64,000 bases of DNA from Pecten maximus (GCF_902652985.1 NC_047030.1:10540001-10604000); one strand, 5' to 3'. Shown: positions 48,258 to 55,033, numbered from the stretch's first letter. Notes: generated by a model not told the origin, from the sequence alone. A program made the numbers and translations.

Positions 48258-49144
48258 GTTAACGTTGCTTCTGGAAACAATAATAATACCCATGGTTCAT
48301 CACGGATCTCATTTATGAAGATAGTTAGTCAAAAGTGATCAATTCTGTACCACACGCCATGGCGAAAACTTCTGATTAAAATAGCTTCACATCAAATACG
48401 TCATATGATCATATACAATCTACTCTAGTAGCTTCCACATCCGGATATGAATATTTCATAAATATCATTTTAATCACAATGGTTTCGATACGTACGAATA
48501 GGCATTTGATGGCTTACACAGTTATTAGATCTCACCGTTGTATATCAAATTATAATGAACTCGTATAAGCATTAACACCCATACTTACTGTTGTAGTTGC
48601 AGTATTCATGCTTCTTGATGTAAGTATGATTATTTCGCTTTTTCATCAAAATACGAGCAGACGATCGGATGGATTAAAGGACTAGTTGATGATTGAAGGT
48701 TGTACACGTAAAGCACGTTTTTTTTTACCAACATAGGAATAAATTGATTGATTCATTGATTAATTTGGATATTCAAAGTTAAGGAGATAGTTCCATTGGC
48801 ATCCCACCATTTCTTATCGATTGGATTTTAATAGTTTATGTGGGATTTGAATAACCCGTGGACATTACAAGTAGTAGACACGGCTTGTGAACCTTTTAGT
48901 CCCCGGGGTTGTTTTTATATATTTGTCACGTCTGAACAGTGGTAGGTTCAAAACATGTTCAATGTAATTAACCTTCACTGAAAATGTAATACTGGTAATT
49001 ATGAAATGTATTTAATTATGTTACTTTTATATTTCAAATCCAGTTCTTTTGACCAATCTCGAGTGTTTAGGTATCTTTCTATACCATTTAAGACAGTAAG
49101 TATCACTTTATTTTGTTTTGACACACGAATATGAATTATGCATG

Positions 49145-49402
49145 TGTCACCAGGTCGTTTATTATTATAAACACTGTGCGGCATAATGAATGTGCGTATA
49201 GAGTTCGTATCGTGTGTAGTGACCCGTGTCTATATATATTATGTTATGTACGTGTACAGTGTCCTGTCGAAGTCTTGTCGCAGTGTCCAGTCTTAGGTGT
49301 GACGTGTGTCCATGTAGGGGTGATGATTGGGTATGGTTGTATATTTGTCCATATTGGGAAAGAGTTGATGAGTTTCGTTGTCGTGCTGTAAGTTGTTAAT
49401 AC
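49145..49402 (+). repeat. Inverted, internally deleted copy of the same LTR 5' part
   Basis: 49145-49360 is the reverse complement of ~49878-50093 (about 8 mismatches by eye); 49364-49402 matches ~49589-49627. Confidence 0.92.
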
Positions 49403-49404
49403 AA

Positions 49405-50093
49405 TCTTTTCAATCACGACAATTAAGTCTTGAATATATTTCATTACACATTTATTTGTTCCTTCCTGTCGACAACCTATAACAATAATACAAATAATAA
49501 AAGACAATGACAAACTCTAAATACAGAAATACATACGACGACTAACACTAGGTATATCGCGGTACATGTACAAAATCACGCGGACAAAGTATTAACAACT
49601 TACAGCACGACAACGAAACTTATCAACCTTACATTTACACCAATTGAATTAAGATATACATAGCAGTCTACTTAGCTTATATTTTGAATATATTTGTAAA
49701 GACTATCACTTACCCGAGCACAACTGGATAATCTCATCTTGCGCGAGCATAAAGATGAGTTGACTTTATCTGTATTTATCAACGCCCGTACAGGTCAGTC
49801 CCAGGCTTCAAAGTGACAGGGAAAGGACAGGTAACATGCATGCACGCACACTTACATCAACAACCAATCAGAACTATTTCCCAATATGGACAAATATACA
49901 ACCATACCCAATCATCACCCCTACATGGACTTACGTCACACCTAAGACTGGACACTGCGACAAGACTGCGACAGGACACTGTACACGTACATAACATAAT
50001 ATATAGAGACACGGGTCACTACGCACGATACGAACCCTATACGCACATTCATTATGCCGCACAGTGTTTATAACAATAAACAACCTGGTGACA
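49405..50093 (-). mobile_element. Gypsy 3' LTR (distal end truncated) preceded by PPT at 50094-50105
   Basis: Minus strand AGAGGGGGAGGA|TGTCACCAGG; AATAAA on the minus strand near 49455. Confidence 0.85.
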
Positions 50094-50747
50094 TCCTCCC
50101 CCTCTTAGAGTAAATGCCTCCTGGCATCTAACCTGAAATTTAAAAATGTTCGGTAATCAAGCACAAACATGACTTAGTACCAAATTTGAACCTGTGAGTA
50201 AACAAGAATAAATGCTTATTAGATTAATATAATCAAACTTTACTGGCTCTGAAATGAAAATAAGAAACCGTCATTAACGCAATTACTAACAAACACACCA
50301 TGTAAATGAAAATGGGGAATTAGTTAGAATTGAAACTAAGTGTTGTCACATAACCAGGATGAACTTAAGTCACACCCAACTGAGTACACTAGATTCCTAG
50401 CACCTATGCTGAAAAGGAATTATCTATACCTCACTTAAACAATTAAGGAGTTTGCTGTGGAATTCATCATACCAATCCACTACATCATAACCATATCCAC
50501 TAGATATAAATGTATGCCTGCTTCCCTAGAAAAAAAAACAGCAAAATGATTAAAACTTCGCCTAAATAAAACAACAAGTACTCTTGTACCCCTGTACTAC
50601 AGAAAGCCTATTTACACAAATAGTTCCTCCTTGTCAGACAAGTTACTCTGACCAACAAGTTGTTGTACCAAACTTCCAAGTCTGTCTGGCTGACGAGTAT
50701 GCAGTACTGGTCTTACCCGTAAATTTCCAGTTTCCCTCGCAAGTGAA

Positions 50748-53101
50748 TTATACGACCACATCGGGAAGCATCACTTCCTTCCTGTCTATACGTCGAGAAA
50801 GCCCATCAGCATCAGCATTGTTCCTGCCTGGTCTATAAACGATTCTGAAATTGTAGTTGGACAAGGACGCTAGCCATCGATGTCCCGTAGCATCAAGCTT
50901 TGCTGAAGTCAAAACATATGTTAGCGGGTTGTTGTCAGTTCTTACCTCAAAAGTATTACCGTACAAATAGTCGTGAAATTTGTCGCACAAAGCCCACTTC
51001 AGACATAGGTACTCCAATTTGTAAGCGGGATAGTTCTTCTCACTATCTCTCAATCCTCGACTGGCATAAGCTATTACCCTTTCCTTTCCGTCCTGCAGTT
51101 GATAGAGAACTGCTCCCAAGCCATCAAGAGATGCGTCGGTGTGAACAATGAATGGCTTTGAGAAGTCCGCATATGAAAGTATAGGTGGAGAAGAAAGCAT
51201 CTCAATAATCTTCTCAAAAGCCTCTTGTTCAGGTCTCTCCCAGTTCCATATAACTTTCTTCTTCGACTGAACCGTCTTCTTGTCAGTAGGATGTCCAACT
51301 AGCAAATCATCCAAGGGCTTCATTATTCTGGCGTAGTCCTTCACAAAACGACGGTAATATCCCGTAAATCCAAGAAATGTACGTAAGGACTTCACAGATG
51401 TTGGCACAGGCCATGACTTCAATGCTTCTGTCTTCGCTGGATCTGTCTTTATTCCCTCTTCTGACACTATGTGTCCGAGATAGCACACCTCCGTGTGAAA
51501 GAACTTGCATTTCGAGGGTTTCAACTTCAGATTATATCGTTCAAGTTTTTCAAACACTGCCTCAAGTCTGTTCAAGTGCTCTTCAAATGTCTTCGAAAAT
51601 ATCAATATATCGTCTATGAAGATTAGACACTCCCTCAGGTTAAGTTCTCCCATGCATGTTTCCATAAGTCTCTGGAATGTAGCTGGGGCATTTGTAAGAC
51701 AAAAAGCCATTCTCTTGCACTCGTAAAATCCTAACGGTCCTACAGAGAATGCTGTCTTCGCTTTGTCCTCTTCTCTCATCTCAACCTGCCAATATCCCGA
51801 TCGTAGATCTAGTTTGCTAAAATATTTGGTACCAATAAGTGTGCCAATCGTATCATCGAACCTGGGCAAGGTATAAGCATCTTTCACCGTTCTGTTGTTC
51901 AGCTTCCTAAAATCTATACAGAAACGTAGTGTTCCATCTTTCTTCCTTACCAGCACCACGTTCGAGCAAAATGGACTCTTGGACTCACGAATTACTCCAG
52001 CGTCCAACATACCTTTCAGGTGTTGACGTACCTCCTCATACATAGATGGGGGAATTCTGCTATACGGATCCCTAAAAGGCGTGTTATCAGTTAGGTTTAT
52101 GGCGTGCTCCACAACAGTTGCTCGTCCAAGATCATTCGCCGACTTCGAGAATATGTGGTCCCACTTACCTATTATCTGGGTGGCTCGTTCCATCTGCTCC
52201 TCGGTAAGACTTTCCTTGTTGATGTGAACCCCTATTTCCGCAATGTCTTTGGTGCCCGCCGTACTCCTCTCAGATGAACCCTCTGGTTTCCAAGTGTCCA
52301 CCACCTTAACCTCACTAAGGGAGCATAATGGCGACCTATGTGGTATCCGAATGGTACGGGTAGTCATGTTACAAACCCGCACGGGTACCCTAACTGCCTT
52401 ACCTGACGACGCTCCTAAACGGACCGCTCTCGGACAAATCGTCAAGTCATTCTTCATCGTGAGACTGGGTTCAGTCACAGCGGTTTCCACACCCTCTACA
52501 CCTCGGGCCATGCCATAGATTGTCATCACTCTATTGGGAACCAATGTAATTGGAACATTGTTCGTAGTCCTCACTGCTACGGTAGGAATGTTTGTCATGG
52601 TATCAATAGCAATTCTCCACGCAGCTTCCATCTTTGTATCTTCATGTTGCACCCCAGGCTGGTTACATATTCTAAGTAGGTTGGTTCCCACACTAACAGG
52701 TACACCGGAGTTGAAATCCGTGGGTGGGGTAACTAGTACTGGTACACAAAATACACCATCTGAAATAAATGGAACAGCGATCTCTGCCTCAGCGTCGCCT
52801 AAGTATGGTATGCTTGAACCAGCAGCTCCATATATTTCCAAATCAAAACCGGAAATACTCCTGAGTCGCGGTTTAGAAGATAAACTTTCATAAAAATCCT
52901 TGGACATACATGTCACCATCGACTCACTGTCAATGAGGGCAACAGTTGTCCTCCCATATATATTAATTGTACCTACATTAACGCTACCAACCATACGATC
53001 ATGCAACGCCTTACCTTTTTGTTTGTTGTTACATTTAGGGCTCTTCAATTCCTCACTGAATTCCTCTGTTGCCCTTCTACAGAGGAAGTTACTCGTTTGG
53101 G
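50748..53101 (-). pseudogene. Ty3/Gypsy pol (protease-RT-RNase H), integrase deleted, gag absent
   Basis: ALIDSES (protease DSG motif altered), LRFCIDFRKLN, LDLRSGYWQV, FCLTNAPATFQR, IFIDDILIFS, RNase H HTDASLDGLGAV...RTDNNPL...NADADGLSR; the ORF stops just after RNase H and the PPT follows ~650 bp later. Confidence 0.93.
53061..53101 (-). promoter_or_regulatory. Putative -1 ribosomal frameshift signal at the gag/pol junction
   Basis: Slippery heptamer C CCA AAC (53101-53095), then GAG TAA in the gag frame, and a perfect 9-bp stem TTCCTCTGT/ACAGAGGAA 7 nt downstream; pol is in the -1 frame. Confidence 0.7.
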
Positions 53102-53149
53102 TGACGAGTATCCTGGTTACCCCACCCACGGATTTCAACTCCGGTGTAC

Positions 53150-53537
53150 GAGTTCTTTCCTGGAGGGGGAGTATGTAACCCTGGTAAATACTAGCCGCAA
53201 TAAACCGATCGAGCTAAAGAGAAGATCTCTCTAGCCGAGCGGTATCTTGCGGCTAGTATTTATCAGGGTTACATACTCCCCCTCCAGGAAAGAACTCGTC
53301 CTCGAGTTTCCAGGGGTAACAGCGATGCTTTCGCAAGCAGCGATGAGCATCATTCCCGAGTCCCTACATTGGCGCCAATGTAACAGAGTGCAGGATTAAT
53401 TAAATTCAAATCACTGCCTCCGCTAGGGATCGAACCTGGGACCTCTGGCTTACTAGTCTTACGCTCAACCGATCGAGCTAAAGAGAAGATCTCTCTAGCC
53501 GAACGGTATATTGCGGCTAGTATTTACCAGGGTTACA
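53150..53537 (-). mobile_element. TRIM (Helenus-like): 159-bp LTR 53537-53379, PBS, ~105-bp internal region with PPT, partial second LTR from 53273, fold-back 53150-53202
   Basis: LTR TGTAAC...GTTACA; TGGCGCCAATGTAGGG directly after it; GGAGGGGGAGTA before the second TGTAACC; tRNA-like core in the LTR. Confidence 0.88.
53415..53489 (-). ncRNA. tRNA-Thr(AGT)-derived sequence with Pol III A and B boxes inside the TRIM LTR (not a functional tRNA)
   Basis: TAGCTCGATCGGTTGAGCG (A box, D arm), CTAGTAA anticodon loop, GGTTCGATCC (B box); acceptor and anticodon stems are imperfect. Confidence 0.75.
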
Positions 53538-54074
53538 CATGTATCGAATAGATAAGGATGATATGCACTCCATTCGGGGAAGTGACTTTCAAATGTCTGT
53601 TAATTGCATGTGATGTCTATTGAGCACTGCATGTAAATTTGTATTTCGCTGGTCTTGTGATTATCTTAACTTTATACACGACACGACACATTTCAAAGGC
53701 ACAGACTAAAACGTAATCAATTCCTTAGATAACATGACCGGAGACTATATTTACCAGTGAGGACAATCAGACAACAAGTTCCTAAAAATAATTAAAAATG
53801 TACGAAAAGGTCATGTGTCCTGTAGCTGGATTAAAATTTTGGTGCCTGAGAGTGTTTCATTACGTCACAAGACCTTCATTTATATTACACTCTACTTGAT
53901 GCTTTCAGGTGTGTGAAAAGTGTAAATTGAACATAGGATCCGACTTCGAACGTTTTTGTGTTAACTGTTTTCGATTATCGCAGTGTACGGCTTAGAAACC
54001 AGTATGTGGAAAAAGCCACAGTAACATTTTGATTAGACTTTGTAATGTATATCATGATATAATACCATTGAACT

Positions 54075-55033
54075 AACCATGACTTTGCTTGGTTTCAGCG
54101 ATTAAGCCATGACTTTGCTTTGCTTTCAGTGATTTAGCCATGACTTTGCTTGAATACTACTGATTTAGCCATGACTTTGTTTGACTATCAGTGATTTAGC
54201 CATGATTTTGCTTTGCTTTCAGTGATTTAGCCATGACTTTGCTTGAATACTACTGATTTAGCCATGACTTTGTTTGACTATCAGTGATTTAGCCATGACT
54301 TTGCTTTGCTTTCAGTGATTTAGCCATGACTTTGCTTGAATACTACTGATTTAGCCATGACTTTGCGTGACTATCAGTGATTAAGCCATGACTTTGCTTG
54401 AATACTACTGATTTAGCCATGACCTTGCTTGACTATCAGTGATGAAGCCATGACTTTGCTTGAATACTACTAATTTAGCCATGACTTTGATGGACTATCA
54501 GTGATTAAGCCATGACTTTGCTTGAATACCAGTGATTTAACCATGACTTTGCTTGACTATCAGGTATTTACCATGACTTTGCTTGACTATCAGTGATTTG
54601 ACCATGACTTTGCTTGATATCAGTGATTTACCATGACTTTGCTTGACTATCAATGATTTGGCCATGACTTTGCTGGACTATCAGTGATTAAGCCATGACT
54701 TTGCTTTACTATCGGTGATTTAGCCATGACTTTGCTTGACTATCAGGTATTTACCATGACTTTGCTTGACTATCAGTGATTCAGCCATGACTTTGCTGGA
54801 CTATCAGTGATTAAGCCATGACTTTGCTTGACTATCAGGTATTTACCATGACTATGCTGGACTATCAGTGATTTAGGCATGAATTTGCTTGAATACCAGT
54901 GATTTAACCATGACTTTGCTTGACTATCGGTGATTTAGGCATGACTTTGTTTGACTATCAGTGATTCACCATGACTTTGTTTGACTATCAGTGATTTAGG
55001 CATGAATTTGCTTGACTATCAGTGATTAAGCAT
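54075..55033. repeat. 30-31-bp satellite, left part
   Basis: Unit GCCATGACTTTGCTTGACTATCAGTGATTTA, about 31 copies, with a local 93-bp trimer periodicity. Confidence 0.97.

What the first reader, a model, noticed from the sequence alone, without database searches (positions are those of the whole stretch)
49141..53541. A tRNA-carrying TRIM and a Gypsy element fused into one insertion with a shared CATG target duplication: a possible record of the TRIM's helper element
Seen: on the minus strand the order is TRIM LTR, PBS, PPT, partial TRIM LTR, fold-back, 34-nt inverted pol snippet, Gypsy pol (starting at the gag/pol frameshift), integrase deletion, PPT, Gypsy LTR, inverted Gypsy LTR piece. 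The two outer ends come from unrelated LTRs, both are U3-type TG ends facing inward, and both are flanked by CATG. The repeated pieces of each family differ by a similar ~4% (about 8/216 and 3/70 by eye), compatible with one event. Established: TRIMs need trans-acting Gag/Pol, reverse transcriptases switch templates between co-packaged RNAs, and many animal Gypsy elements make 4-bp TSDs. Inference: a chimeric cDNA was made in one particle and integrated as a unit, which would identify this Gypsy family as the mobiliser of the tRNA-LTR TRIM. The PPTs are also alike (GGAGGGGGAGTA-TG versus AGAGGGGGAGGA-TG). Caveat: CATG is palindromic and may be a preferred target, so two insertions followed by deletion could mimic this.
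Basis: partly seen in the sequence, partly recalled or inferred. Interest (0 to 1): 0.85.

Follow-up and report, generated by a model that had tools for sequence, protein, structure and literature searches.

The report
Fused Helenus–Gypsy retroelement, probably one insertion
A 4.4-kb block joins a miniature tRNA-like LTR element (Helenus type) to an integrase-deleted Gypsy element through several strand switches, and it most likely entered the genome as one aberrant reverse-transcription product, which supports but does not prove that Gypsy enzymes copy the miniature element.

Summary
Window 49145-53537 (4393 nt) consists only of pieces of two LTR families. Each outer end is position 1 of an LTR reading inward, and both are flanked by CATG.

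The small element is a Helenus-type TRIM, already described in scallops (Kojima 2024). Its tRNA-like part is not called as a tRNA.

The Gypsy part lacks 1566 nt (integrase) and the last ~18 nt of its LTR. Six internal junctions were mapped, and the three searched for (four searches) occur nowhere else in the genome. One fold-back starts at a natural hairpin in the TRIM LTR.

Both families make 4-bp target duplications. They share LTR ends (TGTAAC/TGTCAC), a GAGGGGGAG polypurine core and the PBS start TGGCGCC. CATG precedes only about 2-4% of TRIM copies, so a chance match of two separate insertions is unlikely.

The two Gypsy LTR pieces share a 2-bp deletion absent from 13 other copies. A second, unique Gypsy-LTR/TRIM hybrid joined inside the PBS lies elsewhere on the same contig. 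The scan had already reported such a hybrid on other DNA of this genome (s1-802598).

Not settled:
- The junction signatures also fit DNA repair.
- The sampled Gypsy copies encode no capsid Gag.

Verdict: one insertion of a chimeric DNA about 0.7; made in one particle about 0.5.

The parts
49141..49144 (.). Left copy of the 4-bp direct repeat CATG (putative target-site duplication)
   Evidence: Read directly. The length equals the TSD length of both families.
49145..49366 (+). Gypsy LTR positions 1-224, inverted relative to the rest of the Gypsy part. The outer end is exactly LTR position 1 (TGTCACC).
   Evidence: It shares a private 2-bp deletion with the forward LTR copy.
49365..49402 (+). 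Gypsy LTR positions 483-520, inverted. It joins the previous piece at a 3-nt microhomology, with 258 nt skipped.
49403..50093 (-). Gypsy 3' LTR, positions 1 to about 698 of 716. The last ~18 nt of U5 are missing.
   Evidence: comparison with L061 and L040.
50094..50105 (-). Gypsy polypurine tract AGAGGGGGAGGA
   Evidence: The same tract precedes the 3' LTRs of other copies.
50106..50754 (-). Gypsy 3' non-coding internal region. At its upstream end lies the junction of a 1566-nt deletion that removes the integrase.
   Evidence: The junction is unique in the genome.
50748..53138 (-). Open reading frame of 796 aa: weak protease, reverse transcriptase, RNase H. There is no integrase, and its first codons lie in the inverted snippet.
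   Evidence: It is 95.9% identical to the C3 copy.
53113..53154 (+). Inverted copy of pol 52695-52736 (34 nt exact). It is flanked by microhomologies: GT on the TRIM side and GGTAAC on the Gypsy side.
53148..53211 (+). Fold-back arm: an inverted copy of the TRIM internal end, PPT and LTR positions 1-38.
   Evidence: The junction is unique in the genome.
53203..53273 (-). Second TRIM LTR, only positions 1-71. It ends in the natural LTR hairpin.
53274..53378 (-). TRIM internal region with PBS (TGGCGCCAATGT...) and PPT (GGAGGGGGAGTA).
53379..53537 (-). Complete TRIM (Helenus-type) 5' LTR with a tRNA-like segment (box-B-like GGTTCGATCCC at 53427-53437). The outer end is exactly LTR position 1 (TGTAACC).
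   Evidence: No tRNA is called.
53538..53541 (.). Right copy of the 4-bp direct repeat CATG
   Evidence: Read directly.

Best explanation
The block 49145-53537 is a single, dead-on-arrival insertion of an aberrant chimeric DNA. It was made during reverse transcription of a Helenus-type TRIM and a Gypsy element together.

Inferred sequence of events:
1. A plus strand begun at the TRIM polypurine tract copied LTR, PBS, internal part, PPT and 71 nt of the next LTR.
2. That strand snapped back on the natural LTR hairpin and copied 64 nt of itself.
3. It switched onto Gypsy templates at short homologies. It copied Gypsy from the end of the short gag ORF to near the end of the 3' LTR, skipping 1.57 kb (the integrase) on the way.
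4. It finally copied a second plus strand that had begun at the Gypsy polypurine tract, and ran off at that strand's 5' end.

Both termini are therefore PPT-defined LTR starts. Because LTR ends are short inverted repeats (TGTAAC...GTTACA, TGTCAC...GTGACA), both 3' ends look like normal integrase substrates. One integrase complex then inserted the molecule with a 4-bp stagger at CATG.

Shown: the parts, the junctions, the termini, the repeat, and the family rules.
Inferred: the order of switches, the particle as the place where they happened, and the integrase step.
For: - Exact LTR position 1 at both ends, each next to CATG.
- Both families make 4-bp TSDs. This agrees with the published rule for animal Helenus (PMC10886601).
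- CATG precedes 11 TRIM 5' ends genome-wide, against 516 in the A/T-prefixed class. In the first 100 rows listed by the tool, 68 are dispersed sites, and 3 of these are CATG against 6 TATA. None of about 11 close Gypsy flanks is CATG.
- Every base of the block aligns to one of the two families, and no other fragment of either lies in the window.
- The three junctions searched for are unique in the genome.
- The fold-back starts in a natural LTR hairpin: -11.6 kcal/mol, z -4.6.
- The switch from the inverted snippet to Gypsy lies in a 20/26 similarity.
- The two Gypsy LTR pieces share a 2-bp deletion absent from 13 other copies, and 8 of their 9 differences are private singletons.
- All pieces are 2-4% from the family majority, which fits one age.
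- A second, unique hybrid (L040: Gypsy LTR, PBS, TRIM internal part, TRIM LTR) is joined inside the PBS. This is the junction expected from plus-strand transfer between co-packaged templates.
- Two of about 28 sampled Gypsy loci are fused to TRIM sequence, against roughly 0.2 expected by chance.
Against: - No empty site was found. The flanks are single copy, and the empty-site 36-mer is absent from metagenome contigs.
- The insertion is old (about 4% between duplicated pieces), so a polymorphic empty allele may no longer exist.
- Hairpin snap-back, short templated inserts and 0-6 nt microhomologies are also made by polymerase-theta end joining and replication template switching.
- I found no published precedent for integration of a DNA with two U3-type ends.
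- This TRIM subfamily's PBS matches the Gypsy PBS for only 7-9 nt, depending on the copy.
- The Gypsy copies seen encode Pol but only a 66-aa upstream ORF and no capsid.
Confidence: 0.52

Rival explanations
1. Separate insertions followed by chromosomal rearrangement. A plus-oriented Gypsy copy and a minus-oriented TRIM inserted independently, close together or into the same tetranucleotide. Replication- or repair-based template switching (inversion or inverted duplication plus deletions) then removed everything between their outer ends. On this reading the two CATG repeats match by target preference.
For: - CATG is enriched about tenfold over base composition among TRIM sites, and a diverged Gypsy copy also has CATG upstream (L062).
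- The plus-oriented pieces (LTR 1-520, pol snippet) are collinear, as remnants of one plus-oriented Gypsy would be.
- Rearranged and truncated TRIM copies are common: 4 of 29 sampled have truncated second LTRs.
- The junction signatures fit DNA repair equally well.
Against: - It needs at least two insertions, an inversion and two or three deletions that spare both outer termini exactly.
- It also needs a 2-4% coincidence of the tetranucleotide.
- No genomic DNA or leftover fragment remains.
- The two Gypsy LTR pieces share a private deletion.
- The TRIM and Gypsy parts have similar ages.
Confidence: 0.22
2. One insertion, but the chimeric DNA was assembled in the nucleus. Separately made, unintegrated TRIM and Gypsy cDNAs were joined by end joining with templated fill-ins, and the product was then integrated. 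In that case the block says nothing about co-packaging.
For: - The filler at the TRIM/Gypsy junction resembles polymerase-theta end-joining products (mechanism from general knowledge). It consists of a 64-nt snap-back copy plus a 34-nt inverted copy taken from 376 nt away.
- Three large pieces have resected-looking ends (LTR cut at 71 nt, U5 cut by 18 nt).
Against: - The 1.57-kb deletion and the 258-nt LTR deletion lie inside pieces, not at ends.
- The switch at a 20/26 similarity and the PBS-joined hybrid L040 point to copying errors during reverse transcription.
- Integrase complexes normally form on the cDNA made in one particle (general knowledge).
Confidence: 0.18
3. Assembly artefact. 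On this reading, repeats were wrongly joined, or palindromic long reads created the fold-backs.
For: No read-level check was possible.
Against: - The fold-back arms are short and 4-6% diverged rather than long and identical.
- All junctions lie within 4.4 kb, which is shorter than typical long reads.
- The flanks are unique.
Confidence: 0.04

Closest known systems
Helenus (TRIMp3) non-autonomous LTR retrotransposons, Kojima 2024 (PMC10886601)
   Same: - The family has 159-nt LTRs with a tRNA-like segment, a PBS, a PPT and no ORF. It is about 423 nt long and makes 4-bp TSDs.
- It is reported from Pectinidae, and a Gypsy helper is suspected from PBS similarity.
   Different: - This copy is not a canonical element. 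Its second LTR stops at 71 nt and runs into a fold-back and a Gypsy body.
- The paper infers the helper only from PBS similarity and reports no physical chimera (no occurrence of 'chimer' in the text).
Complex LTR retrotransposon insertions made by template switching, Sabot and Schulman 2007 (PMC1950507)
   Same: - A composite of two elements sits inside one TSD of family-typical length.
- It is explained by switching between co-packaged templates, followed by normal integration.
   Different: - Those complexes join related elements in direct order, with three similar LTRs and near-identical outer LTRs.
- Here the partners are unrelated in LTR sequence, the order includes strand inversions, and both ends are U3 starts.
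LTR-mediated retroposition chimeras, Tan et al. 2016 (PMC5131818)
   Same: There are multiple microsimilarity-guided switches within one cDNA, and more than two switches are documented.
   Different: Those chimeras carry host mRNA pieces between normal LTRs. No strand-inverted segments or hetero-ends are described.
Hetero-LTR Gypsy/Helenus hybrids in this same genome (scan finding s1-802598; locus L040 here)
   Same: The same two kinds of element are fused, which suggests joint reverse transcription.
   Different: - Those hybrids are simple: Gypsy LTR, shared PBS, TRIM internal part, TRIM LTR.
- The present block has six junctions, two fold-backs and a Gypsy coding body.
Hairpin self-priming of nascent retroviral DNA (literature on HIV-1 strong-stop DNA, e.g. 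PMC6088434, seen by title and abstract only)
   Same: A nascent strand folds on a hairpin and copies itself. Here this happens at a natural TRIM LTR hairpin.
   Different: It is known mainly from in vitro and virion studies of minus-strand strong-stop DNA, not as an integrated fossil in an LTR retrotransposon.

Membership tests
Helenus / TRIMp3 | Two short LTRs flanking only a PBS and a PPT, with no ORF | tested here: met
   Family copies are 423 nt: 159 + 105 + 159. In the window copy the second LTR is truncated at 71 nt.
Helenus / TRIMp3 | tRNA-derived sequence with Pol III boxes in the LTR | tested here: inconclusive
   A box-B-like GGTTCGATCCC and D-arm-like sequence are visible. ARAGORN and Rfam call nothing in the window or in 16 other TRIM loci. 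The published description also says tRNA-like rather than functional.
Helenus / TRIMp3 | 4-bp TSD in animals | tested here: met
   Most of the 25 complete copies printed (about 14) show a perfect 4-bp duplication.
Ty3/Gypsy LTR retrotransposon | Pol domain order RT, RNase H, integrase | tested here: met
   Reference copy L061 has RVT_1, RT_RNaseH, Integrase_H2C2 and rve in that order. The window copy has RT and RNase H only.
Ty3/Gypsy LTR retrotransposon | LTRs with TG...CA ends, a PBS after the 5' LTR and a PPT before the 3' LTR | tested here: met
   The LTR runs TGTCAC...GTGACA, the PBS is TGGCGCCCAAC and the PPT is AGAGGGGGAGGA.
Ty3/Gypsy LTR retrotransposon | A Gag (capsid/nucleocapsid) gene upstream of pol | tested here: not met
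   Only about 390 nt lie between the LTR and pol in two subfamilies (L061, L063). The only ORF there is 66 aa, RG-rich and without a Pfam match.
Template-switch complex insertion (Sabot and Schulman type) | Flanking TSD of the family's length around the whole composite | tested here: met
   CATG lies on both sides, and both families make 4-bp TSDs.
Template-switch complex insertion (Sabot and Schulman type) | Outer LTRs nearly identical, with a shared internal LTR | tested here: not met
   The outer ends come from unrelated LTRs (TRIM and Gypsy), both as U3 starts.
Single integrase-mediated insertion | An empty site with one copy of the tetranucleotide in another haplotype or species | not testable with these tools
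   The flanks are single copy in the assembly. The metagenome scan was blank.

The most novel reading that the evidence does not exclude
The block is a physical fossil of one virus-like particle in which a Pol III-type Helenus TRIM and a Gypsy element were reverse-transcribed together. It would then be the first direct (non-similarity) evidence for the helper of Helenus elements. It would also show that an LTR-retrotransposon integrase can insert a DNA whose two ends are both PPT-defined U3 starts.
Probability: 0.45. Interest if true: 0.65.

Novelty: new variant of a known kind. Interest (0 to 1): 0.5.

Why it matters
So far, helpers of miniature LTR elements have been inferred only from shared PBS or LTR similarity. 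A chimera inside one target duplication is a record of the two RNAs or cDNAs meeting, so it turns the helper question for Helenus elements into something testable in bivalves.

It also documents, in a natural genome, how error-prone reverse transcription can be: hairpin self-priming, strand switches and internal deletions. Finally, it suggests that integrase needs only the short inverted terminal motif, not a true U5 end.

The value is limited because this is a single old copy without empty-site proof, and because simpler hybrids of the same two element kinds were already noted in this genome.

Tried and rejected
Checks that gave nothing:
Later genome searches gave tables only.
- Searches of the genome with 400 nt of each flank found only the locus itself, so there is no empty haplotig.
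- The empty-site 36-mer is absent from metagenome contigs.
- The integrase-deletion junction, the TRIM/fold-back/pol junction and the fold-back junction have no second copy. The block was therefore not amplified or duplicated.

Readings considered and rejected:
- The whole 949-nt left end as one LTR with long terminal inverted repeats. Other copies show a 716-nt LTR without the inverted part.
- Autointegration or a 2-LTR-circle junction at the left fold-back. The U5 end is truncated by ~18 nt, so that junction is not an integrase joint.
- One Gypsy or one TRIM insertion later rearranged in place. Neither can give the other family's exact U3 start next to the duplication.
- A DIRS-like element with inverted repeats. 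An integrase and direct LTRs are present in complete copies.

Not done:
Copies were compared one by one, and per-column majority states were only counted.
- A tail-to-tail TRIM pair on C13 could not be fetched.
Full report
**Observation**

The region was read directly and analysed for repeats. It was then aligned to a complete copy of each family: TRIM copy L003 and Gypsy copy L061 at C3:33.28 Mb. The window is G000:C16:10540001-10604000 in a 918-Mb animal genome of 3983 contigs. From memory these figures fit the king scallop assembly; this was not tested.

The block 49145-53537 (4393 nt) is flanked by CATG at 49141-49144 and 53538-53541, and the repeat is exactly 4 bp. On the minus strand it reads:
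- a complete TRIM LTR (53537->53379);
- PBS TGGCGCCAATGT..., a 105-nt internal part and PPT GGAGGGGGAGTA;
- 71 nt of a second LTR;
- a 64-nt arm that is the inverted copy of the preceding internal end, PPT and LTR start;
- a 34-nt exact inverted copy of pol 52695-52736;
- Gypsy sequence from 43 nt before the stop of the short upstream ORF, through protease, RT and RNase H (a 796-aa ORF);
- a 1566-nt deletion that removes the integrase (junction 50755/50754);
- the 3' non-coding part and PPT AGAGGGGGAGGA;
- the 3' LTR, lacking its last ~18 nt;
- two inverted LTR pieces (positions 520->483 and 224->1).

No other fragment of either family lies in the 64-kb window.

**The two families**

The small element belongs to a family with more than 2000 candidate hits. 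Complete copies are about 423 nt (159 + 105 + 159) and make 4-bp TSDs. A lead from an earlier scan note (s1-802598) led to Kojima 2024 (PMC10886601). That paper describes such tRNA-like TRIMs as Helenus. It reports them from Pectinidae, states that animal Helenus makes 4-bp TSDs, and suspects Gypsy helpers from PBS similarity. ARAGORN and Rfam call no tRNA in the window or in 16 other TRIM loci, so 'tRNA-like' is the correct word.

The Gypsy family has about 50 hits. A complete copy has 716-nt LTRs (TGTCAC...GTGACA), PBS TGGCGCCCAAC and a 1334-aa Pol with RT, RNase H and integrase. Its TSDs are 4 bp: TTTA, TAAG, TTAT, TATA, TGTA. Only about 390 nt lie between its 5' LTR and pol, holding a 66-aa RG-rich ORF and no capsid domain. 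A copy only 78% identical has the same layout.

**Junctions**

Six junctions were mapped.
- J1: the second TRIM LTR switches strand at CGGT, inside a natural LTR palindrome. As single-stranded DNA that palindrome folds at -11.6 kcal/mol (z -4.6). The fold-back extends it to an ~80-bp hairpin.
- J2: from the inverted TRIM arm to inverted pol, sharing GT.
- J3: from inverted pol to forward Gypsy, sharing GGTAAC within a 20/26 similarity that also exists in the reference copy.
- J4: the integrase deletion, sharing TC within an 8/12 similarity.
- J5: from LTR position ~698 to inverted LTR position 520, with no clear homology.
- J6: a 258-nt skip, sharing AAC.

The integrase-deletion junction, the TRIM/fold-back/pol junction and the fold-back junction occur nowhere else in the genome. 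The block is therefore a single copy.

**One insertion or several?**

Both outer ends are exact LTR starts, and the 4-bp repeat has the length both families produce. I measured how common CATG is as a target.
- Exactly 11 TRIM 5' ends in the genome are preceded by CATG.
- 516 TRIM 5' ends fall in the class whose fifth upstream base is A or T. That class excludes PPT-preceded 3' LTRs.
- Of the first 100 rows listed, 68 are dispersed sites. I tallied these by hand, leaving out three tandem arrays. CATG occurs 3 times and TATA 6 times.

CATG therefore accounts for about 2-4% of sites. It is enriched over the roughly 0.3% expected from base composition, but it is far from dominant. None of about 11 flanks of close Gypsy copies is CATG.

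If the two ends came from independent insertions, the match has a chance of a few percent. At least one inversion and two deletions would also have had to spare both termini exactly and leave no foreign DNA.

Three further observations favour one origin.
- The forward and inverted Gypsy LTR pieces share a 2-bp deletion absent from 13 other copies.
- Eight of their nine differences are private singletons.
- The TRIM and Gypsy parts all lie 2-4% from their family majorities.

I put one-unit insertion at about 0.7.

**Mechanism (inferred)**

Each strand of the block begins, at its 5' end, with position 1 of a U3. That is the place where a PPT-primed plus strand starts.

A simple reading is this. 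A TRIM plus strand was extended through a hairpin self-priming event and several template switches onto Gypsy nucleic acids. Near the end of the Gypsy U5, its 3' end paired with a second, incomplete plus strand begun at the Gypsy PPT. The two strands copied each other to their ends.

LTR termini are short inverted repeats, and the two families differ in only one of six terminal bases. The resulting 3' ends (...GTTACA and ...GTGACA) therefore look like normal integrase substrates.

The product lacks integrase, gag and a usable second LTR, so it could not move again. This fits its being a single copy.

**Does it name the helper?**

Independently of the chimera, the families share TSD length, LTR termini, a 9-nt PPT core at the same distance from the LTR, and the PBS start TGGCGCC.

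A sister TRIM subfamily carries the full Gypsy-type PBS TGGCGCCAAACGTGGGGC.

Locus L040 (C16:26.61 Mb) is a unique hybrid of Gypsy LTR, PBS, TRIM internal part, PPT and TRIM LTR, joined inside the PBS. That junction is what plus-strand transfer between co-packaged templates would give.

Two of about 28 sampled Gypsy loci are fused to TRIM sequence, where about 0.2 would be expected from TRIM density (my rough estimate).

An earlier follow-up in this scan reached the same conclusion from another hybrid (s1-802598). The phenomenon was therefore already found on other DNA of this genome.

Against a firm assignment:
- This TRIM subfamily's PBS departs from the Gypsy PBS after 7-9 nt, depending on the copy.
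- The Gypsy copies seen lack a capsid gene, so at most they supply Pol.
- The junction signatures would also arise from polymerase-theta end joining of separate cDNAs in the nucleus, or from replication-type repair.

**Comparison with what is known, and novelty**

Chimeric or complex LTR insertions from template switching are known (PMC1950507, PMC5131818; also noted for TRIMs in PMC13570524). Helenus is known as well.

What differs here:
- the partners are a Pol III-type TRIM and a Gypsy element;
- two strand inversions are present;
- both termini are U3 starts.

I class it as a new variant of a known kind, of moderate interest.

**Limits**

No reads, independent assemblies or related genomes could be consulted. 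The duplicated pieces differ by about 4%, so the insertion is old and a polymorphic empty allele may no longer exist. Copies were compared individually.

Noticed in passing
L040:1205-2129 (G000:C16:26611693-26612617, minus strand): A unique hybrid element: a Gypsy-family LTR (5'-truncated near position 54-64), the shared PBS, a TRIM internal part and PPT, a TRIM LTR, and then a further PBS-like 11-mer. The join lies inside the PBS. No second copy of the junction exists in the genome.
   Followed up: partly
L061:5853-6260 and L063 (G000:C3:33.28 Mb; C2151): Otherwise complete Gypsy copies with an open 1334-aa Pol have only about 390 nt between the 5' LTR and pol. That stretch holds a 66-aa RG-rich ORF and a 50-nt tandem duplication, but no capsid domain. 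Two subfamilies 78% identical share this layout, so the lineage may depend on Gag from elsewhere.
   Followed up: partly
G000:C3:37577527-37579799; also C2:4352638-4352930 and C4:10081062-10081723 (coordinates): There are tandem arrays in which the first ~23+ nt of the TRIM LTR recur every ~52-160 nt. They appear to be satellite-like arrays derived from the TRIM LTR start.
   Followed up: no
L022:1370-1500 (G000:C7:10.529 Mb): A TRIM whose second LTR stops at position 106, inside the box-B-like T-arm. It continues with 12 nt identical to the complement of the Gypsy-type PBS (the 3' end of the presumed tRNA-Lys primer) and an inverted LTR end. This is possibly a switch between the tRNA-like LTR part and the tRNA primer.
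   Followed up: no
G000:C13:31787766-31788427 (coordinates): A complete minus-strand TRIM lies 15 nt from a plus-strand partial TRIM (LTR plus 54 nt), so that here too two LTR starts face inward. The site could not be fetched.
   Followed up: no
window 54007-54984: A tandem repeat with a 31-nt period, about 30 copies at 60-94% identity, lies 470 nt to the right of the block.
   Followed up: no
L006, L014, L025 (TRIM loci): The second LTR is truncated at 45, 73 and 40 nt, within or near the LTR hairpin (positions 31-71). This suggests the hairpin is a frequent stop or break point.
   Followed up: partly
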